NCBI GenBank assembly: GCA_001949185.1
Contig: BDGG01000011.1
Coordinates: 1,678,902-1,742,901, forward strand
Direction: 5' to 3'
DNA: 64,000 nt
Source of the DNA: Ramazzottius varieornatus
Taxonomy: Eukaryota > Animalia > Tardigrada
Shown here: piece after piece, positions 10,692 through 42,452 of the stretch
Position numbering within the stretch: position 1 is the stretch's first letter
How the letters are laid out: each line of letters begins with the position of its first letter
Program-made: the position numbers and the translations under genes
The notes under the pieces: generated by a model
What the model was told of the DNA's origin: nothing
The model's database searches: none
Seen by the model: only the letters and a program-made list of their open reading frames with translations

Positions 10692-12150
<1,459 letters not shown>

Positions 12151-12156
12151 ATTAGA

Positions 12157-12828
12157 ATGGCTAACTGAGAGCAATTAAATTTCCAAAACAGGTTTTCACC
12201 TCTTATAGAACAGTTTATCGTTTTGCATGATCACATTTTATCTATTTTAATCCTTATTCAGTCTATTGTCGAATATAGACTAACTAAATTGTGCTATAAT
12301 AAATTTAGAGTCACTAAGCAGAGAGAAAATCACGAACTAGAAATTTTATGAACTTTTCTGCCCGGAATAGTTTTAATTATTATCGCCTTCCCGTCCTTGC
12401 GCTTACTTTACTTATCAGAAGAAAGAGAGAAATCGCCCTTAAATATTAAAACAATAGGCCACCAATGGTATTGATCTTATGAGTACAGAGATTTTAAAGA
12501 ACTTGAATTCGATGCTTTTATAAAGCCTGTCGAAAAAACAAGTTCTTTTCGTCTTTTAGAGACAGACAACCACACATGCATCCCAACAAATACACCTGTC
12601 CAAATATTTGTTTCTTCCACTGATGTTTTACACTCATGAACTATTCCAGCAATAGGAGTGAAAGCTGATTCTACTCCAGGACGTCTTAACATTATTAATA
12701 TTATAGCAATAAAGCCAGGTTTATTTTACGGTCAGTGTTCAGAAATTTGCGGAACAAACCACAGTTTCATGCTTATCACCCTTGACACGCGACCCATTTA
12801 CTTTTTTGAAGAATGAGTAAAAATAATA
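12157..12828 (+). pseudogene. cox2: cox2 (NUMT copy)
   Basis: ATG at 12157; [30 protein letters not shown]. Confidence 0.92.
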
Positions 12829-12956
12829 ATTAGCAGATAATTTAAAAGCTCTAATGCGTCGAGCTTTTAATTCGAAGATAAAGAATATTCTGTTTAAATT
12901 AGAAAACTTAATTAAAAAAAAAGTTATCAACTTTAAATTACTCGTACGTAATTTTC
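12829..12956 (+). pseudogene. mt trnK and trnD copies
   Basis: Anticodon arm tcgagcTTTtaattcga; position between cox2 and atp8. Confidence 0.55.
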
Positions 12957-12957
12957 T

Positions 12958-13612
12958 GTGCCCCGCATATCAAATTTACCGTGAATAAGAATTTATATTG
13001 TCATATCTGTTATTATTAACTTAATTTTTATATCTTCCTCGCACCCTGCTCAGAAAATTATAGTAAGAAAAACCCCAACAGAACTATTGTTTTATCAAAA
13101 TAAATGATTATGACAGTAAGATTATTTTCCTCTTTTGACCCAATAGGGGGTGTTTTTTCCATAAATTACGTTTCTCTTTTGACTTTTCTTATTAGGCCCG
13201 TTTTAGGAGACTTCATTTTTTTACAAAAAAGTCGAAAAAAACTTTTAAGTTCCGATATTCATTTGTCAATTGAAAGGGAATTAAATAGAACAATTTCAAA
13301 CCCCTTCAAAAAAGGAAAAACCAACCTTCTCATGGTTATTTTTTGTAGATTATCACTAATAAATTCAACAGGTTTGATACCTTATTTATTTACAAGGACA
13401 GCTCATATAGCTGTAAACTTATCGCTAACATTGCCGTTTTGATGAGGTTTTATCTTATTTAGACTTTTTTACAACACCGACCATTTTTTTAGTCAGTTGG
13501 TGCCTTTAAGTACCCCACTCCCCCTTTCACAGTTTATAGTAATTATCGAAAGAGTTAGTCAACCAATTCGTCCAATTACTTTATCAGTACGCTTAGCTGC
13601 CAATATGACAGC
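12958..13612 (+). pseudogene. atp6: atp8 and 3'-truncated atp6 (NUMT)
   Basis: atp8 (M)PHMSNLPW; atp6 LFSSFDP...RPITLSVRLAANMTA, then a break. Confidence 0.85.
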
Positions 13613-14250
13613 ATTAACTTATCAATACCTCCCAATGGTGACGAGATGTTTCACGAGAAAGATCTTACCAGGGTTACAATAGAAATTTAGTTATGAATGG
13701 ACTACGATGAGGAATACTGTTATTTATTACCTCCGAAATTTTTTTTTTTCTTTTTTTTAAAGTTTTCTCCGTAGAAGATTAGCCCCCAATATGGAGGTTG
13801 GACTTACCTGGCCCCCTTTAGGGATTGCAGCAATTAACACTTTCCAAGTTCCGCTTTTAAATACCTCCGTTCTACTCGCTAGGGGGGTTTTTGTAACTTG
13901 AGCCCACCATGGTTTAATTGAACAAAACAATAAAGTTAAAAAAGCAAATATATTAATCACAATTGTTATAGGTTTATATTTTACTACCCTTCAAGGTTGG
14001 GAATACTGAGAATCATCTTACTCAATCAGAGACTCAAGATTTGGTAGAACTTTCTTTTTAGCAACTGGATTTCATGGATTACATGTATTAGCAGGGACAA
14101 TTTCTTTGTTAGTGGGATTGGCGCGACACAATATGAACATATACTCCCTCACCCATCACTTAGGTTTAGAAACCGCCATCTGGTGTTGAAATTTTGTTGA
14201 TGTAGTGTGATTATTTCTCTATAGTTTTCTATATTGATGATGTTATTACA
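13613..14250 (+). pseudogene. cox3: 5'-truncated cox3 (NUMT)
   Basis: QWWRDVSRE, PLLNTSVLLASG, TWAHH, ATGFHGLHV. Confidence 0.9.
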
Positions 14251-15015
14251 CTTTTAATATATTTAGTATATTTGATTTCCAATCAAAAAGTTTCTTCTAT
14301 ATAGTGTAATTTTAGTACCAATATTTAGCCTTATTACAATTATTATATTTCTTATAGCACTATCCTATATATTAAAAACCCAAAATCAAATTAAATGACA
14401 AGAGAAGATGAGAAATTTTGAGTGCGGGTTTGACTCAAACCACACTAACCGGATAGCGTTCTCTTTAAGGTTCTTCATTATTACAGTAGTCTTTTTGGGT
14501 TTTGATATCGAAATTGCTGTAATTCTTCCAAGGCCAATAGTAGAAGAAAGTCTTTGTATTAAGACAAGAACACTAATTAACTGATCATTTTTCACTTTAT
14601 TGTTCGGGGGTTTAATTTTTGAATGACAAGGTGCTTTGGAGTGATCATGGGAGTGTATTTAATATAATAAAACTCAAATTGCAATTAAAAATTGTCAACG
14701 ACCTCACCCAAAAATAAGACATAAGTAGTTTCGACCTACCTTCTGATTCTTTAATCCTTATTTATTTTATTATGAATTGTGACTGAAACAGTGTTTAGAT
14801 GTTAACTAAAATTATAAGAAAACTTCTATTTAAAGAATTTAAAATGTAAAGCCGCTGACTTTAATAGTTGTGCACAGCATGAAAATTCTTTAAATAAATA
14901 ATGTAAAATATCATATTATAATTTCATTATAAAAATGCCAAAGGCTTTATTTTGTAAAAGAAAATTACTTTTATTAGATTCTTCAAATCTAAGCTTTAAT
15001 AGAAGCTACCTAAAC
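14250..15015 (+). pseudogene. nad3: trnG, nad3 and tRNA cluster A-R-N-S1-E (+), F (-) (NUMT)
   Basis: nad3 FECGFD...FDIEI; anticodon loops TCC, TGC, TCG, GTT, TTC and minus-strand GAA in the expected order. Confidence 0.8.
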
Positions 15016-16345
15016 AAATGAAATAAACTAATAACAAAATAAAGACTGCAAACGAATACGCCAACCTTCATCTTACAAAAGACACTATAAATACAGAAAC
15101 GAAATTGAAAGAAAAAAAATATTTTCGGGGCCCATAAAATTCTAGCCATCCCTGATTCACAAAACAAAAAATTTTATCGGCTATGATATAAAATATTTTT
15201 AAACCTCGAGCACTTACATTTTGATTTAAAAACCACACAAAACTAAGAACATCTAATTTAAAAAAAAATCTTCTTCAACAACTATATAAGACACCGACAA
15301 AATTATTATCAATACCAGATGAAAAAGTTTTCAAAGTGATAACAAATAAGTGAAAAAAGAAAATTGAAAAAAAATTCCCCTCAAAAAGAACCTATAACAA
15401 TAGAAAAAATAATTAATCTTCAAATGGGAAAAATCAAGTACTTCACATTTTCATAAACCCCCGATAAGGCTGAACGGTAAAAAGTCAAGGAGACGAGTAT
15501 ATAGAAAGAAAGTCGTAATGAATATGAGATGGTTAAAAAAACCCCGACTATAAAAAGAATAATAAATATCATCCTTCTAAACAGAGTATCCAAAATTAGA
15601 TCTTTAGAAAAAAAGCCAGACAAAAAAGGAAAACCACACAGGAATAGAATGCACACCATGAACGAAGACGCAAATAATTTTTTACTAGAAGAGAAGGGGG
15701 ATATATTACGGAAATCTTGTCCTCTATCTTCCCTATGAATAACCAGCCCTCCTCTTATGAAAAGGGAGGCTTTTAATAAAGCATGAGTCAACAGATGATA
15801 AAAACAAAAAATAATTAAACATGTTGAATAGGATAGTATCATGAAAGATAGTTGTCTTAGGGTAGAGTACGCAATAATTTTCTTTATATCCCATTCTACA
15901 TTATCTGTTGTCCCAGCTATCAATATAGTAAAGACTGACACAACTATGAGAAGATAACATACTTTCGATGTGAGTGGACTAATACAAATCAGAAGAAATA
16001 CACCAGCGGTTACAAGAGTGGAAGAATGAAGTAATGACGACACTGGTGTGGGGGCAGCCGTTGCGGCTGGGAGCCATGTCGAAAAGGGGATTTAAGCTCT
16101 TTTGGTAATAAAAGTAACAAGTAAAAAAAAGCTCCTAGCTGAGCAAATGCTTAAGCTTTTCTGTCAAAATACGAAAATCAGGAGAAAAGAGAAAACAAGC
16201 TGATAAAAAAAAGGAAACAAATATCCCCCACGCGATTTGCCAAAAAGGTTAATATCCCCGCGACTGAACTAGAAACTCTTATGTAATAAACTACTAATAA
16301 ATAAGAAACTAAACCCAGGCCGTCTCACCCAAGAAGCAAAAAAAA
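15010..16345 (-). pseudogene. nad5: nad5 (NUMT copy, 5' part deleted)
   Basis: PTPVSSLLHSSTLVTAGV, DIKKIIAYST, GFPFLSGFFSKD. Confidence 0.92.
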
Positions 16346-16349
16346 TTAA

Positions 16350-16600
16350 TACTATAAATAGGAGCAATCTTTAAAATTCTAAAGAAATAAAAACTGAAAG
16401 GAGATGGTCAAATTTTAATACAAGGAGCACTCCCATATAAATTAACATAAATGGAAAAAAAGAAATAGCTAAAATAGTTTAAATCAAAACACAGACCTTG
16501 CAGACCTTGTCTAAAATACTTTAAAGTTTTTAACTTCAGAAAGAGAATTACATCTTAGATCTCCAAACTTCAAATTTTATGGTTGAACTACTTCTGAGAT
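16350..16600. pseudogene. nad4L 5' fragment (-), trnT (+, with a 9-bp duplication), trnP (-) (NUMT)
   Basis: Minus strand reads HLLSVFISLEF; cagaccttg-cagaccttg tandem; minus-strand TGG anticodon. Confidence 0.6.
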
Positions 16601-18080
16601 GAAAAAAATCATAATCGTAAGAAGAATCACTTTATGATTTTTCAGTCTTTTTCAGCAGCCCCTAATTCTTGTAGATGTTTCGACCATCCAAAGTACCCCG
16701 GCAATTTATTCAGCTTTACACTCGTCACACAGAGGCTGAATAGCTTTTTTGCTGTTTCTAATTTTTTTAGGGTGCTTGTTAATTATTTTTGTTTATCTTC
16801 CAGCTCTAATCCCCAATGAAATTTTTTTACCCTCTCGTATAGAAATTATTACATTTTGTTTATTAGCACTCCTACCGATTCTCTGGTCAAAAAAACTGTT
16901 AAACTTAAATTTTTTGACCATAACCAAAGACCTGTAACAGATTTCGCCCATCTATTTTATCATAACATGTTTACATTCATACTATGCTACTTATTTATTT
17001 CTCTCACCGCTACGATATATATTACATCTAAATATAAGACGCCCATAAAAAGATCCTATTATGATGAATATCCGAAAAAATCACCCATTAATCAAAGTTA
17101 TAAATTCCGCTTTAGTGGATCTCCCAGCCCCTTCTAACATTACTCTTTTTTGAAACTTTGGGTCTCCTTTAGGAGTTTGTTTAATAACTCAAATTATTCC
17201 AGGAGATTTTTTAGCAATACACTATACATCAAGAATTGATTTAGCTTTTGATTGTATTAGACATTTAATGCGGGATGTAAACGGAGGCTGGCTAATACGA
17301 GTTACCCACGCGAACGGGGCCTCACTATTTTTTTTAGCCTTTTTTATTCACATCGGGCGGGGATTATATTTTAAATCATATGTATTAAATATAACCTGAA
17401 TAAGAGGGGTAGTTTTTTTTCAATGTCTATAATAACGGCATTTCTAGGTTATGTCCTACCTTGAGGACAAATGTCTTATTGGGGGGCAACGGTGATTACA
17501 GCTCTGTTATCAGCAATCCCATATATCGGGGTTCCTTTAGTCGAATGAGTGTGGGGTGATTTCTCCGTAAATGACGCGAGTCTTACTCGATTTTTTCCCT
17601 CCATTATTTTTTACCTTTTGCTATCAGATTATTAGTAATTACACATTTAACTTTTCTTCATGAACAAAAATCGAGTAATCCCTTAGGCCTGCGCCTTGGA
17701 ATAGACAAAATCACTTTTCACCCTTTTTTTCTCTATAAAAGATTTAACTTCCTTACTTTTAATTATATTTATGTTTATAATAATTAACTATACTTTTCCC
17801 TTTTCCCTCATAGACGCAGAAAATTTTATTCCGGCAAACCCTATAGTTACCCCTGTTCATATCCGACCTCAATATTTTTTATTTTCTTACGCTATCTTAC
17901 GAGCTATCCTTAACAAATTGGGAGGTGTCAAGGCACTTCTCCTTTCAATCCTTATGCTTATTCCTTTAATTTTGCAACCCTCAATAAAACAATTCAACAA
18001 AGAAAATCAAAAGAGCATGTTCTTTTGATTTTTTGTTATAGTTTTTCTAATTTCAACATGATTGGGAGTAAAACCTGTTG
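16600..18080 (+). pseudogene. cob: nad6 and 3'-truncated cob (NUMT)
   Basis: cob [46 protein letters not shown]; ends at WIGVKPV. Confidence 0.92.
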
Positions 18081-31489: not shown

Positions 31490-33020
31490 TGTAATCCCGT
31501 ACTGAATTTTCCCATGCTTGTCCCTTCCATATTAGAAAAAGGGGTGATCCCCTACTGAATGCGAGCCATGATCAAAACATAATGGTACCACGGTATGGTG
31601 CTGCCACCTACAGGTGTGACGTCATGTGTCCCGTCCTGTCTCCACTATAATATACAAGCTGATCTCTCCCACAATAAATTCGCAATGGACCAATACTGCA
31701 GTGCTGCCCTCTACAGGTGTGTCGTCATTGTGTCCCACATTAGAACCGTTTTACTCTGCACGATAGTGTTGGTACCACAGATCCCGTACTGATATCGATC
31801 CCATTCAAAATCCGTACTTCCGCAAGTACGCCAGAAGAACCATACTGGACAGCTCGGAAGATGAAGAAGCAGTCGAAGAACCATCGCCTGAATCAAGATG
31901 AAAAAAGCTAGGGAGCGGTTAGAAAAGCTGACTCCGGATCCAAAGGCAGGCACCAAAGGCCAAATGACTCGAGTTGGTGGTAGCGACGGAAGTTCGGGAA
32001 GGGGTGGCAGCCAAGATGAGGGAACACGTGGACCCAAGAACAAGATGCAGAAACGATCTTCCAAAAGAATTACTGACATCGAACAGTCGGACGATGAATA
32101 GACCGATAGCTGGGGGGAAGAAGTGCCAGGAGCTGAAGCAGACCAGTACCTGTTTCTTCCAGTAAATAATTTTTTGTAGTTGTTTTGCTCAACATGCGCA
32201 AAGTCCGATGACTCTTTTTGTAGCCTACCTCGAACTCTTTTACTGTCTCAACATTTTCAACTTGTTACATAATGTTATTTGATTATGTGGCGGTTTCCGG
32301 CATTGTTGCACTTGTTTAAATTAAGAGTTTTAGGGCATTTCGCTCTGGTGGTGTCTAGCTGTTCCTGGCTCATGTCTTCCAGGTGTTTTACGTCCGTTTA
32401 ATCCCCTTTAGCCTTTGAATGATATTTTGTTACCGTATCAGTCTCGTCTCTTGCGATCAACTTCAGTACGGTACGAAACAGATTTCAGCTCGACAAATAC
32501 TAGGGAAACTTAATGGGTTCAGGTTGTAAACTAGCACGGCGGAGTAATTGGATCTAGTGCGGTAACTCCATCACCTCGAACATGTTACAGTAACGGCAAA
32601 GCAACAGGTAACAGACTGGCGGTAGGCGTAAGGTAAACGCGTTACTGAGTTGGATTACACCATGTCTTTGCGGTAACACCGAGACTGTACTCGGTAAGCA
32701 ACTAGTATGCCAACGGAGTGGGCTGAAGTCCGGCGCAACCACCTACAAGAGCACCATAATTAGCGCGATGACAACATGTCCGTAACATGAATTAAGTCAG
32801 GAAATCAGTATGGGACTCTCCCACGCCGATCCCACATCGAACGCCACCTCGTTCCACCTCAGAACTGAGTGTATTACAACCATTTAGATCAGTACGGGAA
32901 GCAAAATACCATACTGATTTACAAGCTGGTACCTACCGTGGAATGGGCAAACGCCGGAATGGTGGGACCGCCATGTTGACCAAAGTGGGACCTTCTCCAT
33001 GGGCAGAAGTTACAGTACAG
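31490..33020. mobile_element. Probable decayed TIR element with subterminal ATCCCGTACTGA repeats
   Basis: ATCCC(G/C)TACTGA at about 31494, 31547, 31781; inverted TCAGTA(T/C)GGGA at about 32805 and 32889; termini not resolved. Confidence 0.4.
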
Positions 33021-33192
33021 TACGTGTACTGGTACTCTTTCGCATAATCTATGTACTATCAAGATATTATCAACGGTTGAGTCTAACGTCTAACGAAGCA
33101 TCTAACGTCACAAGTTACAACTACGAAGGGACGAGATAGCCAGTTAGGTTTCAACCTGTGTCACTCGTCGACACAAAAGCGTCGCTAGCGAA

Positions 33193-33275
33193 ATGCTTCA
33201 CAACTCCTTCCTAGCAATTGGAATTGTAACAGTCTTCTGCGTTCTCTGCATCGATCCTAGTTCTCTCGTCGCATA
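33193..33275 (+). pseudogene. Putative signal-peptide exon of the GH16-RTK gene, separated from the rest by the TE nest
   Basis: ATG 33193 gives MLHNSFLAIGIVTVFCVLCIDPSSLVA, ending at the maT TA target site. Confidence 0.5.
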
Positions 33276-35082
33276 CACCCCGCTCGCACCAACTTGCTAC
33301 CACCTCTTAGAAAAATTCCTGTACATTCCAGAATGAAAATAGAATTCTCAGTCTAATTCTATATAATCCCCCTTCTTGTCCAGCATCTTCTGAACACGAC
33401 TCTCCCAAGACAAGAGTGATCGGCGGATAACTCCGAGGTCGAAGTTGGCACACACCTCATGAAGGACCTTGCTCAGACCAGCGATCGTGGTAACCTTCCG
33501 TTCACCTGAATTTTTTTTCAAAATCCCGTTGATGGCATAATCCAAAGGAGCTAAGTTAGGGCTGTTGGCCATCCAGTGGTCCTCCGGAATGTAGTTCGGA
33601 TGGTGCTCTTCCATCCAGTTCTGGGTCAGCATCGCCACATGAGACTTCGCTCTGTCGAAGTGCACCCAGATATCCTGCGGATTTTTCGGGTAGAGTCGGG
33701 GAATGTCTTTATGCACCATCGACGACAGGAAATTGTCGATCAAGTACTGCGCTGTGACTTTACATTGCCATCAACAACGTAGGGCTTTGACATTCCGTTC
33801 CAGCAGATCCCAATTGCGACCATGATCTTTTTTGGCCACTGCTTCACCGGCTTTTTGCGCCAGTCATCCGGAACCTCCATAAATCCGTCAGTGTAGAAAT
33901 ACTCGCCTTCGCTGTTGCAATCATCAAGAGTGATCCACGTTTCATCCATCGTGAAGATTTTCTTGACTCTGTTGCCCCACAGATACGGCCCGTTACAGCA
34001 AAGTTGTCCCCGCCGCTTGCGCGCCTTTGCCTTAAAAATTCAGATCATTACTTCTCGCACTATCTCAGCTGGTTTCATAAAATTAAGCGTCTCTTCTGAA
34101 CTGTTAAACGTTATTTCAAGAGTGGGAGGCTCAAACTGATTCGACAACTTCGTTTTGAAATTTGGTTCAGAAACGTTTTTATTTTCTGCTTGTGCTATCG
34201 AAAAAGTATTTTTTGGTCAATAACTAGAATGTCAAGAATGCTCTGATGTACCTATTCCGGTAGCCAAATAAATTGTCTCTAGTTCACAGCAAAAATTGTT
34301 GGAAACAACGCAAAACTTTGTGAAATATAAATTTTCGAATGGAAATTTGAAGGTGCTCTCCGGTCACTTGGCGTGCGCGTTTTTACCAAATTTCAAAAAG
34401 GAAATGGCTAGTCACCCACTAAAACCCAAAAAGACTATTGTCACCCACCGTAATTAATTACTGAAACCCACTAAAGCTATTGTCACCCACCAGAATTAGA
34501 AAATAATTATCCTCAAGCAAACCCGAAAAGACTGTTGAAACCCACTTTTTTTAGAAATTTGTTCCTATGGTATCTTCTTTCAAAAACCATGCGAGATGGG
34601 CATTGTGTAAAAAGAAACGCTGTTTGAATCGAGATTCTGTACTGTGTGCTAAGTACTCCTGTAGTATGTCCCGGTCTAGTACTTCCGACAGTGAGCACGA
34701 TGAGACTTCTGACGAGGATGGTGACCAGGATCAAGACGGATTCATAGTCCATGAACCCGAAGTCATTCCCGAACAAGACCTCAAGAACAAGTTCAAGAGT
34801 AACAACGAGTTCGAAGTAGCTTTTCGGACGTACAACAGGGCGAAATTCCAGACCTGGGTAACGGGAAGGGCCGATCGAATCAAACCCGTGGACAATGTCT
34901 TCGTGTCGACGGATACGTTCCAAAGGGCACAGGCGCAAGGACCTTCACTTTGTCTGTCGTGTTCTATCCTTTCACATCCTTTCTGTCTCTGAGCCTAACT
35001 CAGTTTCCGACAACAGGTGGAAGGCCAAGAGTCGCGTCCAACAATATCGTTGCTACATTCACTCTTTAGAATTCGGCAAATA

Positions 35083-36838
35083 CTGTACTCCCGCGATACA
35101 CACGCCATACTTCCCTCTGTATTAGGAAAAGTAGTACTGCAAGTAAAAAAGTACCGTAGCGTTAACTGAGCTGATTGTCTGATCAGCTTGTTCTTTTGAC
35201 CTGTTGAATTTCTGTTTTCTGTGTTTCCGGTGAAAGAGTCTGAACACTGCTTTACTTTGGTATCCTCCCTTGAACTCTACCTTTTTTGCCTATCATAATG
35301 GGGACATTTAGAACCCGCTCGGTGTACAGAGTATCGGAAGCTGTAAGGAACTTGAGAGCTATGGCGGAAAGCGGGATGTCGATGTGGTCTTACGCGAAGG
35401 TGGTGAAAATTCCAAGGACAACGATCAGAGATTGGAAGTGAGTGACTTCGATGATCAAATATTTTGAAATGGAGTTGTCTCTTATGATGACAATATTTCA
35501 GAAAAAAGCTACCGGAAGGAACTTTCAAAGGCCGCAGAAAACCCATGTTTCAAGATGTGGAAAAGCGAGTGTACCACGAGGTGATCAAGACTAGAAACGT
35601 CGGCTTACCTGTACGCGACTCCGACCTTCGAAAGTGGGCAGCGCAAATCGCGAAAGATTTGAACGTGAAAAATTTCAGGGTATCAAACGGTTGGATATAT
35701 AGCCTGAAGAAGCGATACCGTCTGAGTTATCGGGCAACAACAAAAGTGAGCAGAAAAACGACGAAGACGGCAGCGGATGAGGTACAACAATAGTTTGCTT
35801 TTGTACCAAAATCTTGATGTTCTGTCAGGCTTTCTTATTTTCGAAATTTAAACGTTTAGCTGAAGATCTGTTCTTACAGCTTGAAGAACATGTCTTCATG
35901 GAACGCGTAGAGGAAATTGTTGGCGTAAACAATACTCATCCTAGCCGGATCAACTTCGACCAGACAAGCGTTCTTCTGCAAAATACTTACGGGAAGACGT
36001 TGTCTCCTATTGGAGTGAAGCAAGTGCACGTCATTCAACCTCCAGGGGAAAAGGAACGGTTTACTGTTGGGCTTGCTGTAACGGGAGACGGACAGAAGTT
36101 TCCTGCTGCCATCGTCTTCAAAGGCGGCGTGAAGACTGGACAGTTGTCGGCGAACATTCTAGGAAAACTGAAAATTCCTGATAACGTTCGCGTTTTCAGT
36201 ACGCGTACTGCTTGGTGGAATTCGAGGATCGATCACGAATGGATAAAGCAGTCGTTCGAGGAAGATACTCAGAACACCTTGTACCTCATTCGAGACCATT
36301 TTGCAGCTCATCTGAAATTCGAAAGCAGAGAACTTCTAGAAAGCAGGAACGTCGATCAAGTTTTCATTCCTCGAGGAATGACTGGCACTTATCAGCCGCT
36401 AGACGTGGGCATAAACGCTCCATTTAAGGCTAACCTGAAGCGAGCGTATCATGAATGGCGAAAAGAACGAGCAGAGTTGACAGGTAAAGGATACCTTCGT
36501 AAACCCTCCCGACAGGACTTCATCGACTTCGTGTCTCAAGCTTGGGCAGATGTGAATCCAGAAACAATCGAGAACGCGTTCGTGGGGGCTCAAATTCTAC
36601 CTGAACCAACATATATGATTGCTAATGAACAAACTTCTGTAGAGAATGATGAAGCGCCATTGGAATTTAGCTTTAGTTCGATCGAAGAGAACAGTGGTGA
36701 CGAAGTGGCGGAAGATTCCTCTTTAGAGTACAGCTTTTCGACTGATTATTGATTCAATAAAGTTCAAATTTTCTGCCCCCGGGAGGTGCACATTCCTGAC
36801 GTACGTACGAGTATGGCGTGTGTATCGCGGGAGTACAG
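35083..36838 (+). mobile_element. pogo-superfamily transposon (DD35D) with perfect TIRs
   Basis: TA duplication; 29-bp perfect TIR CTGTACTCCCGCGATACACACGCCATACT. Confidence 0.95.
35298..36752 (+). CDS. pogo/CENP-B-type transposase (HTH + HTH_Tnp_Tc5 + DDE_1), about 430 aa, 3 exons, apparently intact
   Basis: Exons 35298-35437, 35502-35781, 35880-36752 join in frame; FRVSNGW; NFDQT, RDHFAAH-35aa-QPLDVGIN. Confidence 0.85.
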
Positions 36839-37782
36839 TAAAATGAAGTAAAATTCGGGTGCGGTGGGTCTCTATAGCTTTTTTGGGTTTGGGATTATCT
36901 GTCTGCAAATTAATTTCACTGGGTGACAATAGTCTTACTGGGTTTCAGTCCAAATTTCAGTGGGTGACAATAGTCTTTTTGGGTTTTACTGGATGACAAT
37001 AGCCCCACCCTTTCAAAAAACACGGGTGAAACTTTTTCTCGAATCTTTCGATGCGTTTAATCTCAACGATTCTTCTTGTGTTCCGATGATACTAGAGAGC
37101 TTAAATAACAAGAATAGACGTGTTTTAACTGGTGAATTCGACCCGTGCCTGGAAACAAAATTTTCTACAAAACGGGGACAACTTTGCTGTAACGGGCTGT
37201 ATGAGATAAACAGCTTTCCGCGCTCGTACCTTTGTTTCTTCTGTGCATCCGTCAGGTGGTGCAACTTCTTCTTCTTGCGCGCGTCCAACCCCAAATCTTG
37301 GTTGATGATCTTGGCCACAGTGCTCCGAGAACATCCTAGCTTACGAGCAAGCTGTCGTTGGGAGTCCGGACGCTTCTTGAGGATTGCTCTCTCCACTTTC
37401 CTGATCGTGTTCTTGGTACGCACCGAGGGAAGGTTTTGCGGAGGAAGTCGTTTCGCAGATTTGGCCCATCCGATTCCATCCGTTCCTTCTTTTCTGATCA
37501 GCCTACCAATTGTTTTATAATGGATATGAGTTCCGAGGCTCAGAAGCTGCTCAGAAATTTGCTTGTACGACAAACGTTGGCCATGCAGCGCTACAACCAT
37601 CGCCTTCGTTTCAGAACTAGTTTCTGAACCCATTTCGGAAACAATCTCAACAAGTAATATCTTAAAAGATGCGGCATTAAAAATGAGTTCTGAAGTCAGC
37701 TGAGATGACAGAAAAGCATGTACAGGAATTTTTGTTTACAGCCAAGTTTCAGGTGGTAACAAGTTGGTGCGAGCGGGGTGTA

Positions 37783-40672
37783 AATGCATTGATTCACGTG
37801 CCTTTTGCTGACACTGCTTTTGTGCACCTGGTTCGATACATGCCGTAAATACGAAGGTTTGGCGTGAGATACTGCGAGACGACTTCAGTTCATCAAGACA
37901 ACCCTCACCGTACCGCTGGATCGCCTTTGAGGAACTTGAGGTTTACATTACCCCACCCGACAAGGTATACCGTGGATTTAAATGGTGATTACGTGGAAGA
38001 TGGTTGCCTGAAGTTCTCTGTCAGTAGTCCAAAGACGATGGCCGACACCATCGGCAAGTTTCGTTTTCGTTATGGCGAAGTGGAAGCTGGCTTGCGTGCT
38101 CCCCATGAAATGGCACTAGAGTCCAGGTTCGTCCTGGTTACAGACAGCTGCAGCCTGCATTCCTGCACAAACATTTTTGAGGGTGGTTACCCGCGCATCC
38201 ATATCGCGGAATTCACTGGATTACCTCGTGTGGACGCAGCCAATGTGCAAGTGCGCTCAGTTTTCGGTAACTACTCAGACGGAGACTACCTGTACCGGAC
38301 GGTGGATCTCAAAGGCCTAAGTCTGTTTAGCGGTTTCCATGTTTACCTAGTGGTATGGAACAGTGGCAGTCTGACATGGTTCATCGATAATGAGACAGTA
38401 TTTGAAATCACAGACCAAATGGCCATCGCCCACAATTTTACGCGCTTACAACCTTCGACGTACACAGGGACGGGAATCAGTCGACGTTTATGGCCTGGTC
38501 CCGCTGAGTTTGAGATCGACTACATTGTTGTTCGGCAAGAAAATCCGCACGCAGAACCCGACCTTCTGTTTTTTGCGGATTTCACCAGAATGAAAATGAT
38601 TCTTCAAAGTTTCTTCAAAATCACTTCGTTTATGGATTAGCCGGCGGTCAAAAACCTCTCCAAGATTAGCCAGCCGATACGGTGAAATCACAGACAGGTC
38701 GTTGCGGATGGCTTGTGTTCGTGATCCGCAGATGAAGATCCAGACGACCATCACACTGGGCACTGTGAACCATTTTGACTTCCTTTATGGAGAGTTTGAA
38801 TTTCGAGAGCGCTTCCCCAAGCCGTCTATGGGAAGCGTGTTCGTCGTAGCCGGACTGCGAAATTACCTATGTGATTTGGATGGATCTAAGTGCGATACCC
38901 GTAACAAAGTACCAGACGTTTCATTCTGGCAAGCAGCTTTAAAACTGACGCGCGGGACAACCCAGAATCCGGTTCGGCTGACTTATAGAACTGCGAACTC
39001 AGTTGGAAGTACTGTTAAGTCAGAGCTAACGCTGTCAAAAGAACTCGGTCTGTCGGACGCCTTCCATACGTACAGGACATCGTGGACTCCTTCTAGTTTG
39101 ACGCGGTTTGTGGACGACGAGAAAGTGTTCGCCGAAGACGATACCGAAAAGATTCCAAAGATACGAATGCACTTTTACTTCAATTTGGTTTGCGACCTGC
39201 TCAACTATACGGAAAACACTTTGGATACAAGCCAACTGCTGATTGAATCAATAACTGTTCGACAGCTGAATTCTTCATACGACACCGATCAGCTCCGTAC
39301 ACAGCCTTCTAAATCTGGAGGGGAAGGGTGGAGGAACGAAATCTTGTATTGTATTCTTGGGGTTGCTCTGTTACTGTATTGTTGACGTCATATACTCCTT
39401 GTTGATACTAAAAAGACGGGAGAAAGAACGCCTTGGATGCAGGAGCAGGGACGATTCATCGCCAGTCTTTGTTACCAGTGGAAATTATCAATTTGCCCCG
39501 TATACTACCGGCACCATCCTGCGCGGACATCTTTGTTGTACGGCCGGAAACCTTTCGCGAAGTACTAGTTTCTTTTGAAATATCTGTCTGAAATGTTCAT
39601 GGGGCTCTGCAGCTCAAAGCCATAAATGATTTATTTTGGCAGGTGATGAAATTCTGGGGCGAAGCGAGCACGGTATCGTCTTTATGGAAACCGACACCGG
39701 ATTATACGGCAGAGCCGGTCCAACCCTAGTAGCGGTCAAGATGTTGTTCTCCGCAGAAGAGAACTCTTATGCGGGCGACTCTTTTCTCAAGGAGCTAACC
39801 GTTCTAGCGTATTGTGGTCACCACTTCAATATTGTGAATCTACTGGGAGTTGCTAACAAAGGTCGTCCATCCCTCCTTCTCGAACATTGCCACTACGGAT
39901 CTCTTCTCGGTTTTGTTCGCGAACACCGTCCGCCATTCTACTTCAACCACGTTGATCCAGAAGGACACCTCTTGCCTTTGGACAAAGTAGCGTACGCGCA
40001 AGACAGCAACGATCAGTACGAACAACTGGAAGATGAAACTTGCGATCATGCGTTACTGTCGACCAAAGACCTGATCAACTTCGCCTACCAAGTAGCCCGC
40101 GGTATGGAGTACTTGGCTTCTCGGCCCATCGCGCACCGAGATCTAGTAGCGCGGAATATTCTAGTGGACAAGGGGAAGATTGTCAAGATATCCGATTTCG
40201 GTATGGCTCGACAGGAAGGAGAGTACGTCCTTCAGGATGACAGAATTGCGCTGCCTATACGATGGATGTCGCCCACCTCCGTTCTCAGCTCGACGTTCAA
40301 CGAAAGTAGCGATGTCTGGTCTTATGGAGTCTTACTATGGGAGATGTTCACTCTAGGCGAAGTACCTTACGGACAGCGGACGAATGGTGGGAACGTCGGA
40401 ACATTTCTGCAGGAAATCTTGCAGAAGGGACTACGCTTGTTGAAACCTGAGTACTGCCTTACCGACCTGTAAGTCCCGTCGATCTCAACCAAGTTTCTTC
40501 GAGACGGGCCACTTGTCAATTTGACATAGGTGTATCGTCCTGTATTTCCAGGTATAAACTGATGAGGGACTGCTGGGTCGGGAGCACGGATACGCTTAGC
40601 CCGACATTCAAGGTTTTGAAAAATAGACTGGATGACCTGATCACGCGGGATGTGGCGGAGTATTATGGCTAA
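37783..40672 (+). pseudogene. Receptor tyrosine kinase with two GH16 (beta-glucanase/ConA-like) ectodomains; frameshifted
   Basis: GH16-1: VWREILRDDF, FRYGEVE, FHVYLVVW...WFID, FEIDYIVVRQ. GH16-2: LLFFADF, FLYGEFE, FHTYRTSWTP. Hydrophobic TM then KRREK. Kinase: VAVKML, insert, HRDLVARN, DFG, LPIRWM, SDVWSYGV, last exon YKLMRDCW. Frameshifts or stops near 37900, 38580-38690 and 39380. Confidence 0.85.
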
Positions 40673-41721
40673 TGCTATTTTGCCTGCCCACCGTTTTGGT
40701 GCAAAACAGCTATTTGGCTATTTTGCCCACCCTTTTGGGCAAGATAGTATTTGGCTATTTTGCGCGCCCTGGTGAAAACAGCTGATGTCTATTTTGCTCC
40801 CCCCCCCCCCCCCNNNNNNNNNNNNNNNNNNNNNNNNNNNNNNNNNNNNNNNNNNNNNNNNNNTTATTTTGCTCCCCCCCCCCCCCCTATATCGCGCCTT
40901 ATTTCTCTAAAATCAAGTTCGAGCTTCAAAGAATGAAGACCCGTGTTTGAAATTTGGGGGTTGCGGCGGCGAAGTGTAAGCTAGGCCGCTTAGATTTCTC
41001 TAGATTATTACTCTACACCGCAAGAAAAATTGGTCCTTCAGTTTACCAACGTTTCTCTGCGGCGTCGCGGTCGCGGCGGACCTGCCCGTGAATTTTCAGC
41101 CGCCTCAGGAAAGAGTACATAAAGGTAGCTGGTGCAGCACAGTGTTGGTTAAGGTGAGCTGGCGAATCCGTATCCGTGAGGATGGACCTCCGGTTGAACA
41201 GCCCAAATCCAAGCCGTCTAGACGCTCTAGACACGGTTATCGACCACCGAGCCGTCACAATACCAACAGCAGACATCCCTTTTCCACAGAAAATAGCGAT
41301 TGTCGCTGGCAACGTGGTTCCAAAAGCACAGTAGAGAAGCTAGCGTTCGTTCCAACGGAGACGCTGGTGGCGGAATCTGACGTGGCGCACGCAGCGGTCG
41401 AGGTGGTAGGTAGCGGTAGTAGCGGTGGTCGCGGTGATAGATACGATTTCATAGTGGTGTTCAAATGCCGCGGTCGAGAAAGAGGACCCTTGTTCTGGAC
41501 AAGATGGGTAAAACGATAGCGCATGAAGATATCGATAGAACTCGTGAGTCCAGCCAAGACCATGAACCTGCTTGACGATACCCTAATACTTTCCTCATCG
41601 AGAGGTCTTGCTGTAATTTGCTAATCATGATTCAAGGTCGCAGCGGCGGCCATGGTCGTCCACGGAATTCAAAACTTGGCTCAAGGCAGGCGGGGGGGGG
41701 AGGGGGCAAAATAGCCATTCC
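40667..41721. mobile_element. Probable TIR element (MULE-like ends) spanning an assembly gap
   Basis: Repeated GCTATTTTGC(C)n at left; inverted GGGGGCAAAATAGCCATTCC at right, similar to the terminus at 34400; weak Ulp1-like peptide (SIDIFMRY) on the minus strand. Confidence 0.4.
40814..40863. other. Assembly gap (50 N) between poly-C tracts
   Basis: Read directly. Confidence 1.
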
Positions 41722-41921
41722 GTTTCTGGATATCCGGTACGTTGTTTCTACCGGTACGCTGTTTTTACCGTGATATTGTTTTGTGCAACAAGCGACCTAT
41801 TAGACTATCGAAAAACAAATTTGACGAATATTTGGTCCACACTCATTTTTACACCTGGTGATCTACGGGTACAAGCAGTTGTTTTGGAGAATTTAATGCG
41901 TCCGCTAGGCGCTAGGCAGAC

Positions 41922-42452
41922 GAATGCAGCAATGGGCTGAGCAGTCCGTGCCCAACGCAACATGGCATTGCGGCGGCTTCGCCTCCTCCGTGCTATGGCA
42001 CCGCCGGTTCGGTCCCAAACACTTCCACTCGGAAGCCCAGTAGTCCAAGACAGGTCACACGCACTCGACGTTTGCGCTTACATCAGCGAGCTGCAACCCT
42101 AAATCGCCTGCCGCATCGCACTCCAGCGGCTTCGCCGCCTCCGTGATCCGGAATCATCAGCTCGATTGCGCGCCTTCAGATACTGGGCTTTCAGGTGGCT
42201 GTGTGAGAACGAGTAGATGATTCCGGATCACGGAGGCGGCGAAGCCGCTGGAGTGCGATGCGGCAGGCGATTTAGGGTTGCAGCTCGCTGATGTAAGCGC
42301 AAACGTCGAGTGCGTGTGACCTGTCTTGGACTACTGGGCTTCCGAGTGGAAGTGTTTGGGACCGAACCGGCGGTGCCATAGCACGGGGGAGGCGAAGCCG
42401 CCGCAATGCCATGTTGCGTTGGGCACGGACTGCTCAGCCCATTGCTGCATTC
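41922..42452. repeat. Long near-perfect inverted duplication (237-bp arms, 57-bp spacer)
   Basis: 41922-42158 is the reverse complement of 42216-42452 with one visible mismatch. Confidence 0.95.

What the first reader, a model, noticed from the sequence alone, without database searches (positions are those of the whole stretch)
33193..40672. Receptor tyrosine kinase with tandem GH16 glucan-recognition ectodomains
Seen: signal peptide, two GH16/laminarinase-like domains, TM, and a split (insert-bearing) tyrosine kinase, all colinear on one strand. The GH16 catalytic ExDxxE motif is replaced (PRIHIAE in domain 1; not recognisable in domain 2). Established: non-catalytic GH16 domains bind beta-1,3-glucan in arthropod GNBP/bGRP and horseshoe crab factor G, which signal through protease cascades rather than a fused kinase. 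I know of no characterised GH16-RTK. Inference: a lineage-specific receptor family coupling polysaccharide sensing (fungal or algal glucan, immunity or food) directly to phosphotyrosine signalling. The compact, intron-poor GH16 units might be of horizontal origin. This copy is frameshifted, so intact paralogs would be expected elsewhere.
Basis: partly seen in the sequence, partly recalled or inferred. Interest (0 to 1): 0.82.

Follow-up and report, generated by a model that had tools for sequence, protein, structure and literature searches.

The report
Dead copy of tardigrade GH16-ectodomain receptor kinase
This stretch of the Ramazzottius varieornatus genome is a broken copy of a receptor tyrosine kinase whose outer part is two inactive beta-glucanase-like (GH16) domains. 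Intact copies exist in this and two other tardigrade genera, so the receptor type is real, apparently tardigrade-specific and unstudied, but this copy is dead.

Summary
The core observation holds. Window 37784-40672 (+) encodes, in order, a signal peptide, two GH16 laminarinase-like domains without the ExDxxE catalytic motif, a transmembrane helix and a PDGFR/Kit/FGFR-class kinase with a ~45-aa insert.

This copy is a pseudogene.
- Exon 1 has 7 frameshifts and 2 premature stops.
- A Tc1/mariner element, now holding nested transposons (33276-37780), sits one base upstream of the ATG.

It lies in the old 5' flank; the real start is 37784.

The genome is Ramazzottius varieornatus. Two intact tandem-GH16 paralogs lie on contig C3 (RvY_06820, RvY_06815). 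Three more GH16-kinase loci lie on C6, C9 and C19. Paramacrobiotus metropolitanus has at least 10 such genes and Hypsibius exemplaris at least one.

No non-tardigrade example appeared in the best-hit lists, and no paper describes the architecture. Databases call these proteins "hypothetical" or "Kit/FGFR-like".

Glucan binding is only inferred: the catalytic residues and the WPAxW aromatic motif are both replaced. A horizontal origin of the GH16 units is not supported.

Verdict: a new variant of a known kind (a lectin-type RTK). The family is moderately interesting; this locus is a dead member.

The parts
37784..39561 (+). Exon 1 of the pseudogene: signal peptide, GH16 domain 1, linker, GH16 domain 2, TM helix and juxtamembrane segment. 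It carries 7 frameshifts (~37814, ~37956, ~38600, ~38689, ~39377, ~39486, ~39548) and 2 in-frame stops (37790, 38667).
   Evidence: Frameshift-aware alignment to paralog B exon 1: 46% identity over 609 aligned residues. tblastn segments fall in frames 3/1/2/3/1. The last 1-nt deletion was deduced from the splice phase.
37784..37860 (+). Degenerate native signal peptide (MH*FTCLLLT...), with TGA at codon 3 and a frameshift at ~37814.
   Evidence: It aligns with the MHFLKCVLVILCVNSPALIH of RvY_06820.
37870..38590 (+). GH16-like domain 1 (approximate limits). The catalytic strand reads R-I-H-I-A-E.
   Evidence: PF00722 E 1e-07, 32 bits. It is 50% identical to domain 1 of paralog B.
38690..39330 (+). 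GH16-like domain 2 (approximate limits). The catalytic strand reads D-V-S-F-W-Q.
   Evidence: PF00722 E 2.8e-05, 24 bits. It is 37% identical to domain 2 of paralog B.
39340..39428 (+). Transmembrane helix and basic stop-transfer (…ILYCILGVALLL / IVDVIYSLLILKRREKE), split by the frameshift at ~39377.
   Evidence: The homologous TM of A and B is intact.
39562..39642 (+). Intron 1, 81 nt, GT..AG.
   Evidence: Sequence. The junction is homologous to the SRS|D junction of the annotated RvY_06820.
39643..40468 (+). Exon 2: tyrosine kinase domain with a ~45-aa insert. The frame is open, but it has private changes at conserved sites (Gly-loop GxGxxG to GxSxxG; HRDLAARN to HRDLVARN).
   Evidence: PF07714 E 1.4e-57. 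It is 70-71% identical to A and B. The best PDB matches are Kit, PDGFR, FLT3, VEGFR and FGFR.
40469..40551 (+). Intron 2, 83 nt, GT..AG.
   Evidence: Sequence. It is homologous to the DDL|YQLMKDCW junction of RvY_06820.
40552..40672 (+). Exon 3: end of the kinase domain (YKLMRDCW...) and the TAA stop. The tail is ~45 aa shorter than in paralog B.
   Evidence: B's tail is shown.
33276..37780 (-). Outer Tc1/mariner-type element with terminal inverted repeats CACCCCGCTCGCACCAACTTG.. and a TA duplication at 33274-33275 and 37781-37782. It is inserted one base upstream of the ATG. Its two halves (33276-33985 and 37199-37780) are separated by nested insertions.
   Evidence: In other genomic copies the two halves are contiguous, ~1.28 kb at 78-85% identity. 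The ends were read. Tc3-type HTH hits are on the minus-strand ORF 37013-37633.
35081..36840 (+). Innermost nested element: a 1.76-kb pogo/Tc5-type DNA transposon with 31-bp inverted ends.
   Evidence: DDE_1 and HTH_Tnp_Tc5 hits. At least 7 other copies are 99-100% identical.
33193..33336 (+). Its first 81 nt are the former 5' flank of the gene and the rest runs into the transposon end. It is not part of the coding sequence.
   Evidence: It has no similarity to the N-termini of A or B.

Best explanation
Window 37784-40672 is a unitary pseudogene of a tardigrade-specific receptor tyrosine kinase family.

Shown:
- The intact form is seen in paralogs RvY_06820 and RvY_06815 on contig C3. It is a type I membrane protein with a signal peptide, two tandem GH16 (laminarinase-fold) domains without the catalytic Glu-Asp-Glu triad, one TM helix, a juxtamembrane segment and a PDGFR/VEGFR/FGFR-class kinase with a short insert and a Tyr-rich tail.
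- The window copy cannot make this receptor. A Tc1/mariner element landed one base upstream of its ATG and later collected three nested transposons.
- Exon 1 carries 7 frameshifts and 2 stops.
- The kinase has private substitutions at near-invariant positions, and the tail is truncated.

Inferred for the intact paralogs: the dead-enzyme GH16 domains act as lectin-like ligand-binding modules. The most likely ligand is a beta-glucan-type or other repetitive polysaccharide, which being multivalent would cluster receptors. Clustering would trigger trans-autophosphorylation and phosphotyrosine signalling. The ligand and the biological role (immunity, food sensing or cuticle/wall sensing) are not shown.
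For: Architecture and family:
- Pfam GH16 and PK_Tyr hits on the window ORFs, on paralogs A and B (84 bits for GH16) and on the annotated proteins.
- An AlphaFold2 model of the paralog B ectodomain (mean pLDDT 71; domain 1 blocks mostly 80-95) has GH16 laminarinases as top Foldseek hits, with E 4e-14, probability 1.00 and target TM 0.70-0.79.
- Kinase sequence matches to Kit, PDGFR, FLT3, VEGFR and FGFR at E 1e-43 to 1e-50.

One gene, not adjacency:
- Single open frames of 600 and 633 codons hold the signal peptide, both GH16 domains, the TM helix and the juxtamembrane segment in A and B.
- At the C6 locus GH16 and TM share one 431-codon frame that ends ~20 nt before the first kinase exon.
- RefSeq and GenBank models in Paramacrobiotus and Hypsibius carry both domains.

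Pseudogene status:
- Lesions in exon 1.
- Transposon ends and TA duplication next to the ATG.
- 6 private changes at 64 family-conserved kinase sites, against at most 1 in A or B.
- A kinase terminal branch of 0.29, against 0.13 and 0.10.
- The annotated model RvY_15312 is a chimera. It starts inside domain 2, skips the TM and runs into unrelated ORFs at 41043-42040.

Loss of catalysis: ExDxxE is replaced in every tardigrade GH16 domain examined.
Against: - All lesions lie in exon 1. Exons 2 and 3 are open and both introns keep GT..AG. A uniform lesion rate predicts ~4.8 lesions there, so P(0) is ~0.008. The kinase part may therefore still be transcribed or may have been constrained until recently.
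- No transcript data could be consulted.
- For the inferred mechanism, the WPAxW aromatic motif beside the catalytic strand, present in the active homologs, is replaced in both domains of A, B and the window copy. The canonical sugar cleft is therefore remodelled and the ligand may not be a beta-1,3-glucan, or not a glycan at all.
- Restriction to tardigrades rests on best-hit lists: 150 of 1442 ectodomain hits and 120 of 6434 kinase hits. It does not rest on an exhaustive architecture query.
Confidence: 0.85

Rival explanations
1. The GH16-like ectodomains of the intact receptors are protein-binding rather than glycan-binding modules. The fold would be kept only as a scaffold, for example for a secreted peptide or protein ligand.
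For: The catalytic triad and the WPAxW motif are both replaced in A, B and the window copy. The closest kinase relatives in tardigrades carry quite different ectodomains (LRR, C-type lectin/PAN, or none recognised), so ectodomains are swapped freely in this expansion.
Against: The other hallmark GH16 blocks are kept (FRFxYGxVExR, FHxYxxxWxxxxLxWFxDG). From my own knowledge, catalytically dead GH16 domains in crustacean LGBP and earthworm CCF still bind glucans. Several Paramacrobiotus members retain W..xxW at the motif.
Confidence: 0.3
2. The window locus is not wholly dead. Its kinase exons are still expressed, in a truncated or chimeric transcript such as the annotated RvY_15312, and are kept by selection.
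For: Exons 2 and 3 have no lesions against an expected ~4.8, and both splice-site pairs are intact. Pairwise dN/dS against A and B is 0.07-0.13, although dS is saturated. A gene model exists at the locus.
Against: Exon 2 has no in-frame ATG upstream of the Gly-rich loop. The second Gly of the loop and the Ala of HRDLAARN are replaced. The terminal branch is 2-3 times longer than in A or B. The C-terminal tail is truncated. The 3' part of RvY_15312 is low-complexity ORF read-through.
Confidence: 0.1
3. The frameshifts are assembly errors and the locus is a working third tandem-GH16 receptor.
For: An assembly gap (N run 40814-40863) lies 140 nt downstream of the stop codon, so local assembly quality could be questioned.
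Against: Seven separate indels and two substitution-type stops fall within 1.8 kb, while the adjacent 0.9 kb of coding sequence is clean. A transposon with a clean TA duplication lies next to the ATG, and there are extra changes at conserved kinase sites.
Confidence: 0.03
4. The GH16 units entered the tardigrade lineage by horizontal transfer from bacteria and were then fused to a resident kinase.
For: The best non-tardigrade ectodomain hits include multidomain GH16 proteins with bacterial modules (Big_7, RTX, Y_Y_Y) at 28-33% identity. In the GH16 tree, domain 1 of A, B and the window copy groups with catalytically intact unnamed sequences (SH-aLRT 95).
Against: Intron poverty is not special to the GH16 part, because the kinase of this subfamily is also one large exon. 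Tardigrades have stand-alone GH16-like genes that mix with the receptor domains in the tree. The tree has many long branches and open forks, and the unnamed relatives carry no taxonomy. GH16 genes are widespread in invertebrates (my own knowledge).
Confidence: 0.15

Closest known systems
PDGFR / Kit / VEGFR / FGFR receptor tyrosine kinases (split-kinase classes)
   Same: Single-pass type I receptor. The kinase domain is most similar to Kit, PDGFR, FLT3, VEGFR and FGFR (E 1e-43 to 1e-50), with HRDLAARN, DFG, a kinase insert and a Tyr-containing tail. Automated pipelines name the family members 'Kit-like', 'PDGFR-like' or 'FGFR3-like'.
   Different: The ectodomain has no Ig-like domains and carries one or two GH16-like domains instead. 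The insert is only ~45 aa. The tardigrade kinases form their own group apart from arthropod and fish sequences (support 84/92). The APE motif reads SPT in A, B and the window copy.
Arthropod bGRP/GNBP, crustacean LGBP and earthworm CCF (non-catalytic GH16-like pattern-recognition proteins)
   Same: A GH16-fold domain with the catalytic Glu/Asp residues replaced. A role in recognising polysaccharide is plausible.
   Different: Those proteins are soluble and signal through protease cascades to Toll or prophenoloxidase. Insect bGRP/GNBP3 bind glucan mainly through an N-terminal CBM39 domain (my own knowledge), and no such domain was found here. The tardigrade proteins are membrane receptors with their own kinase. 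Mapalo et al. 2020 (PMC7056985) found no GNBP1/3 homologs in tardigrades.
Plant L-type lectin receptor kinases (Lectin_legB + kinase)
   Same: A concanavalin-A-like beta-sandwich ectodomain, a single TM helix and a cytoplasmic kinase. These were the nearest named clusters by protein-language-model features (scores 0.88-0.89, a lead only).
   Different: The resemblance is analogous, not homologous. The ectodomain is a legume-lectin family domain rather than GH16, and the kinase is an RLK/Pelle Ser/Thr kinase rather than a metazoan tyrosine kinase.
Hydra 'Sweet Tooth' RTK with C-type lectin ectodomains, and discoidin domain receptors (recalled from memory, not tested here)
   Same: Animal RTKs whose ectodomain is a carbohydrate-binding-type module rather than Ig, FN3 or EGF domains. 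This is a precedent for lectin-type RTKs.
   Different: The lectin folds differ (C-type lectin, discoidin/F5-8C). None carries GH16. The tardigrade expansion also contains a C-type lectin/PAN member in H. exemplaris (P0193).

Membership tests
Glycoside hydrolase family 16 (Pfam PF00722) | Sequence match to the family profile above the curated cut-off | tested here: met
   Window domain 1 scores 32 bits and domain 2 scores 24 bits, against a 22-bit cut-off. Paralogs A and B score 84 bits with two stretches.
Glycoside hydrolase family 16 (Pfam PF00722) | Beta-jelly-roll fold superposable on solved GH16 enzymes | tested here: met
   AF2 model of the paralog B ectodomain. The top Foldseek hits are laminarinases 4dfs, 3azz, 3atg and 5wut, with E 4e-14 to 1e-11 and target TM 0.70-0.79. 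This was tested on the intact paralog, not on the broken window copy.
Glycoside hydrolase family 16 (Pfam PF00722) | Catalytic motif E-x-D-x-(x)-E on the central strand | tested here: not met
   Domain 1 reads R-x-(Y/H)-x-x-E. Domain 2 reads (E/D)-x-(S/A)-x-x-Q. Active homologs in the same alignment read E-I-D-I-M-E. These are homologs of the family but not predicted hydrolases.
Glycoside hydrolase family 16 (Pfam PF00722) | WPAxW aromatic motif flanking the cleft in laminarinase-type members | tested here: not met
   It is replaced by LVSKLI, LISKFI or LESRFV in domain 1 and by SYAVVG-type sequence in domain 2.
Receptor tyrosine kinase, PDGFR/VEGFR/FGFR-like | Tyrosine-kinase catalytic domain (PF07714; HRDLAARN, DFG) | tested here: met
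   Window E 1.4e-57; A and B E 4e-65 and 6e-66. A and B have HRDLAARN, while the window copy has HRDLVARN and a Gly-loop G to S change.
Receptor tyrosine kinase, PDGFR/VEGFR/FGFR-like | Signal peptide plus a single TM helix between ectodomain and kinase | tested here: met
   Met in paralogs A and B and in the C6 locus. In the window copy both elements are recognisable but broken by a stop and frameshifts.
Receptor tyrosine kinase, PDGFR/VEGFR/FGFR-like | Kinase insert splitting the catalytic domain | tested here: met
   273 residues align to 228 profile positions. The insert is visible between the hinge and 'LSTKDLINFAYQ' in the family alignment. It is shorter than in vertebrate class III/V receptors.
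Receptor tyrosine kinase, PDGFR/VEGFR/FGFR-like | Ig-like ectodomain repeats | tested here: not met
   No Ig-family Pfam hit appears in A, B, P0001, P0003, P0056 or P0180; only GH16 does. These proteins are not orthologs of PDGFR, Kit or FGFR despite their automatic names.
Arthropod bGRP/GNBP | N-terminal CBM39 glucan-binding domain, in a soluble secreted protein | tested here: not met
   No CBM39 hit appears in the Pfam scans of the full proteins. A TM helix and a kinase are present.
Pseudogene (unitary, non-processed) | Disabling lesions relative to intact paralogs, with the exon-intron structure retained | tested here: met
   Seven frameshifts and 2 stops in exon 1. Both introns are retained at positions homologous to RvY_06820. 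A transposon lies at the start codon.

The most novel reading that the evidence does not exclude
Tardigrades were reported to lack GNBP and PGRP recognition proteins and canonical NF-kB pathways (PMC7056985). They may have evolved their own expansion of PDGFR/VEGFR-class kinases fused to lectin-type ectodomains: GH16-like domains in at least 17 genes across three genera, plus C-type lectin/PAN and LRR members. These would act as direct cell-surface pattern-recognition or food-polysaccharide receptors, coupling glycan binding to phosphotyrosine signalling without a protease cascade. That would be an animal counterpart of plant lectin receptor kinases.
Probability: 0.25. Interest if true: 0.8.

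Novelty: new variant of a known kind. Interest (0 to 1): 0.5.

Why it matters
- Receptor tyrosine kinases are usually thought of as growth-factor receptors with Ig, FN3 or EGF ectodomains. A multi-gene family with dead-glucanase ectodomains, conserved across two parachelan superfamilies, would be a new way for an animal to couple a polysaccharide-type ligand directly to phosphotyrosine signalling.
- It offers concrete candidate receptors for an open question: how tardigrades sense microbes or algal and fungal food without the Toll/Imd recognition modules.
- It corrects annotation. Family members are currently named 'Kit-like', 'PDGFR-like' or 'FGFR3-like', or are split into chimeric models (RvY_15312, RvY_06815).
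- The window locus adds only a case history of gene death, in which a transposon landed at the start codon.

Tried and rejected
- **Signal-peptide exon at 33193.** Rejected after mapping the transposon ends and aligning the real N-terminus to paralog B.
- **Extra introns in place of frameshifts.** Rejected. The shifted segments stay homologous to coding sequence of A and B in the shifted frames, including the inter-domain linker that holds the in-frame stop.
- **dN/dS dating of the pseudogene.** dS is saturated (1.4-3.6 or undefined), so the result is only qualitative.
- **GH16 domain tree to decide the origin.** It has many long branches and 19 of 48 forks open. No conclusion on horizontal transfer is possible.
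- **Word-based homolog search with the ectodomain.** It gave only 5 hits. The profile-free HMMER scan was needed to see the family.
- **ESM Atlas.** It holds no large cluster with GH16 plus a kinase, only analogous plant lectin kinases at sub-threshold scores.
- **Literature.** Searches for GH16 or glucanase-like terms with receptor tyrosine kinase, and for a tardigrade kinome, found nothing relevant.
- **Joined spliced models.** Exons were searched separately by reference, and full-length comparisons used database proteins (P0001, P0003, P0056, P0180 and others).

Full report
**Source and locus.** The window is G000:C11:1678902-1742901 of a 55.8-Mb, 200-contig genome. Proteins encoded nearby carry RvY_ locus tags of Ramazzottius varieornatus.

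**What is encoded.**
- Three long + strand ORFs match Pfam. 37864-38640 and 38702-39385 match Glyco_hydro_16 at 32 and 24 bits (cut-off 22). 39636-40472 matches PK_Tyr_Ser-Thr at E 1.4e-57.
- Three-frame translation shows a hydrophobic segment followed by KRREKE between domain 2 and the kinase. A last short exon encodes YKLMRDCW... and ends in TAA at 40670-40672.
- The kinase exon aligns to 228 profile positions over 273 residues, which implies a ~45-aa insert.
- Its best solved relatives are Kit, PDGFR-alpha/beta, FLT3, CSF1R, VEGFR and FGFR.
- The colinear GH16-GH16-TM-split kinase observation is therefore correct.

**Intact paralogs show that this is one gene.**
- Searching the same genome with each window ORF finds two loci on contig C3 where domain 1 (48-52% identity), domain 2 (38-40%) and the kinase (70-72%) are colinear.
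- In paralog A (L015 5992-7791) one open frame of 600 codons holds a signal peptide, both GH16 domains, a TM helix and the juxtamembrane segment. In paralog B (L016 7825-5927, minus strand) the equivalent frame is 633 codons.
- The kinase exon and a short last exon follow small introns.
- Pfam gives 84 bits for GH16, in two stretches, on these frames.
- Paralog B is annotated as RvY_06820, 947 aa, with PF00722 and PF07714. Paralog A is annotated as the truncated RvY_06815.

**The window copy is a pseudogene.**
- A frameshift-aware alignment of paralog B's exon 1 to window 37700-39700 starts at ATG 37784. It runs at 46% identity but needs frame changes at ~37814, 37956, 38600, 38689, 39377 and 39486.
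- It also passes in-frame stops at 37790 (codon 3) and 38667.
- Comparing the donor region with paralog B shows one more 1-nt deletion at ~39548. This deletion is required to bring exon 1 into phase with exon 2.
- The shifted stretches remain homologous to coding sequence of A and B, so they are not extra introns.
- Introns 1 (39562-39642) and 2 (40469-40551) keep GT..AG at the positions used in RvY_06820.
- The tail stops ~45 residues earlier than in paralog B.
- The public annotation splits the relic in two. One model is a 200-aa domain-1 protein (P0007). The other is RvY_15312 (P0008), which starts inside domain 2, skips the TM region and reads on into unrelated ORFs at 41043-42040.

**The supposed signal peptide at 33193.**
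- A DNA search of the genome with 33000-37800 shows that 33273-33985 and 37199-37782 are the two halves of a ~1.28-kb element. These halves are contiguous elsewhere, at 78-85% identity.
- Its ends are inverted repeats (CACCCCGCTCGCACCAACTTG...) flanked by TA at 33274-33275 and 37781-37782. This is the hallmark of Tc1/mariner insertion.
- The element therefore sits one base upstream of the ATG at 37784.
- Inside it lie further insertions. The innermost is a 1.76-kb pogo/Tc5-type element (35081-36840; DDE_1 and HTH_Tnp_Tc5) with at least 7 copies at 99-100% identity.
- The ORF at 33193 is former 5' flank that now runs into the transposon end. With the element removed it would terminate in TAA immediately before the ATG.
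- The native signal peptide is the degenerate MH*FTCLLLT... at 37784, which matches paralog B's MHFLKCVLVIL.

**State of the kinase part.**
- All nine lesions are in exon 1 (1778 nt). The 944 nt of exons 2 and 3 have none. A uniform rate predicts ~4.8, so P(0) is ~0.008.
- Pairwise dN/dS against A and B is low (0.07-0.13) but dS is saturated. Most of the divergence therefore predates the loss of function.
- The window kinase still shows relaxation. At 64 positions conserved in at least 85% of 15 other tardigrade family kinases it has 10 deviations, 6 of them private. These include G to S in GxGxxG and A to V in HRDLAARN. A and B have 5 deviations each, at most one of them private.
- Its terminal branch is 0.29, against 0.13 and 0.10.
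- Exon 2 has no in-frame ATG before the Gly loop.
- I read the locus as dead, and I keep residual expression of the kinase exons as a 0.1 rival that only RNA-seq can settle.

**Nature of the ectodomain.**
- Sequence searches of the PDB with paralog A exon 1 and paralog B domain 1 hit only GH16 enzymes. Laminarinases come first (3azx at 1e-11, then 4dfs, 3atg and 4bow). Both domains contribute hits.
- An AlphaFold2 model of paralog B residues 1-520, built from a 51-row alignment, has mean pLDDT 71. Domain 1 blocks are mostly 80-95 and domain 2 blocks mostly 55-80.
- Its top Foldseek hits are laminarinases, with E 4e-14, probability 1.00 and target TM 0.70-0.79.
- In a MAFFT alignment with 30 unnamed homologs, 24 of which carry E-[ILVMF]-D-x-x-E, the tardigrade domains differ. 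Domain 1 reads R-M-Y-I-V-E, R-M-Y-M-T-E or R-I-H-I-A-E. Domain 2 reads E-V-S-L-N-Q, E-V-A-L-D-Q or D-V-S-F-W-Q.
- Every Paramacrobiotus receptor and the three tardigrade stand-alone GH16-like proteins in that alignment (two Paramacrobiotus, one Hypsibius) also lack the motif.
- The neighbouring WPAxW motif is replaced too, while the blocks FRFxYGEVE and FHxYxxxWxxxxLTWFIDG persist.
- These are GH16 homologs that are almost certainly not hydrolases and whose canonical cleft is remodelled. Glycan binding is a reasonable inference but is not shown.

**Extent of the family.**
- A PF00722 scan of the genome gives 13 matches.
- Besides A, B and the window copy, GH16 matches on C6, C9 and C19 lie upstream of kinase exons on the same strand.
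- At C6 one 431-codon frame holds signal peptide, GH16 and TM, and ends ~20 nt before the first kinase exon.
- At C19 a GH16 exon is followed by a 477-codon frame with an unrecognised domain and the TM, and then by the kinase.
- At C9 the kinase appears to lack the HRD-DFG segment.
- GH16-only loci lie on C8 and C5. Kinase relics of this subfamily lie at C3:1700923 and C3:1525110-1525797.
- An exhaustive HMMER scan of 1.84 billion representatives with paralog B exon 1 gave 1442 hits. Among the best 150, eight further proteins contain a tyrosine kinase after a TM helix.
- Seven of the eight are from Paramacrobiotus metropolitanus and one is the window's own model RvY_15312. They are named 'FGFR3-like', 'PDGFR-beta-like', 'Kit-like', 'Ror-like' or 'uncharacterized'.
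- P0056 also has two GH16 domains.
- A kinase-region search added Hypsibius exemplaris 'kita' (P0180, 911 aa, GH16 37 bits) and Paramacrobiotus 'ver-3-like' (P0189).
- No non-tardigrade protein in either list carries both domains. The ESM Atlas holds no large cluster with that pair. Its nearest named clusters are plant legume-lectin receptor kinases at 0.88-0.89, which is a lead only.
- These lists are best-hit samples and not an exhaustive architecture census.

**Evolutionary context.**
- In a kinase tree of 25 rows the 19 tardigrade sequences group apart from arthropod and fish VEGFR, PDGFR and Kit sequences (support 84/92).
- GH16-bearing receptors are interspersed with tardigrade receptors carrying LRR (RvY_02154), C-type lectin plus PAN (H. 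exemplaris P0193) or no recognised ectodomain. The GH16 label needs at least 3 changes.
- This points to a tardigrade-specific kinase expansion with ectodomain shuffling.
- The GH16 tree is poorly resolved. The window copy, A and B form 100%-supported triplets for domain 1 and for domain 2, so the tandem arrangement predates the triplication. Receptor domains mix with stand-alone tardigrade GH16-like proteins.

**Literature.**
- Full-text searches combining tardigrade, receptor tyrosine kinase, GH16, Glyco_hydro_16, glucanase-like and kinome returned no description of such receptors.
- Mapalo et al. 2020 (PMC7056985) report no GNBP1/3 or PGRP-SA/SD homologs in any of their samples and say tardigrades lack homologs of the canonical Drosophila NF-kB pathways. 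They ask whether tyrosine-kinase pathways serve immunity.
- That makes direct lectin-type receptor kinases an attractive hypothesis, though still an untested one.

**Verdict.**
It is unsupported on horizontal origin and unproven on glucan sensing.
- The receptor type is present in public databases but is uncharacterised and misnamed. I class it as a new variant of a known kind.
- The window locus is a transposon-hit, multiply frameshifted dead member.

- No transcript data were available.
Exons were handled separately by reference.
- The search of earlier findings returned only an unrelated note.

Noticed in passing
window 35081-36840: A 1.76-kb pogo/Tc5-type DNA transposon (DDE_1 and HTH_Tnp_Tc5 ORFs, 31-bp inverted ends). 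At least 7 other genomic copies are 99-100% identical, so the family looks recently active in R. varieornatus.
   Followed up: partly
window 33276-37780: Four-deep nesting of transposons. An old Tc1/mariner element holds a ~0.6-kb element (33983-34400 plus 37011-37202). That holds an element with 85-bp inverted ends (34406-34489 and 36920-37004), which in turn holds the pogo-like element.
   Followed up: partly
window 38708-42040: The public gene model RvY_15312 (P0008, 671 aa) is a chimera of GH16 domain 2, the kinase exon and unrelated low-complexity ORFs at 41043-41561 and 41879-42040. A separate 200-aa model (P0007) covers domain 1.
   Followed up: yes
window 40814-40863: A 50-N assembly gap lies 140 nt downstream of the pseudogene's stop codon. 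Near-identical sequence flanks it on both sides (…CSPPPP / …CSPPPP in translation).
   Followed up: no
window 12000-18000: A markedly AT-rich stretch (GC 0.30-0.34 against ~0.47 elsewhere) with no tandem repeats detected by TRF.
   Followed up: partly
G000:C3:1700923-1701378 (L020 1501-1956) and G000:C3:1525110-1525797 (L041 2110-2797, minus strand): Two isolated kinase C-terminal relics of the same subfamily, 59% and 40-64% identical to RvY_06820. The genome search reports in-frame stops in both. No GH16 part was seen nearby.
   Followed up: partly
L033 (G000:C9:1403001-1412000) 4341-7104: A GH16-TM-kinase locus whose kinase open frames jump from the insert region to ALPVKWMPPE. The HRD-DFG segment appears to be missing, so this may be a pseudokinase or a second decaying member.
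   Followed up: no
L035 (G000:C19:254001-264000) 4667-6097: In the C19 GH16 receptor, a 477-codon extracellular frame with no Pfam match lies between the GH16 exon and the TM helix. A second kinase gene lies tail-to-tail at 9599-8465.
   Followed up: no
P0193 (Hypsibius exemplaris), P0177 (RvY_02154): Close kinase relatives of the GH16 receptors carry C-type lectin plus PAN/apple domains, or LRR ectodomains. This suggests a wider tardigrade expansion of lectin-type and LRR-type receptor tyrosine kinases.
   Followed up: partly
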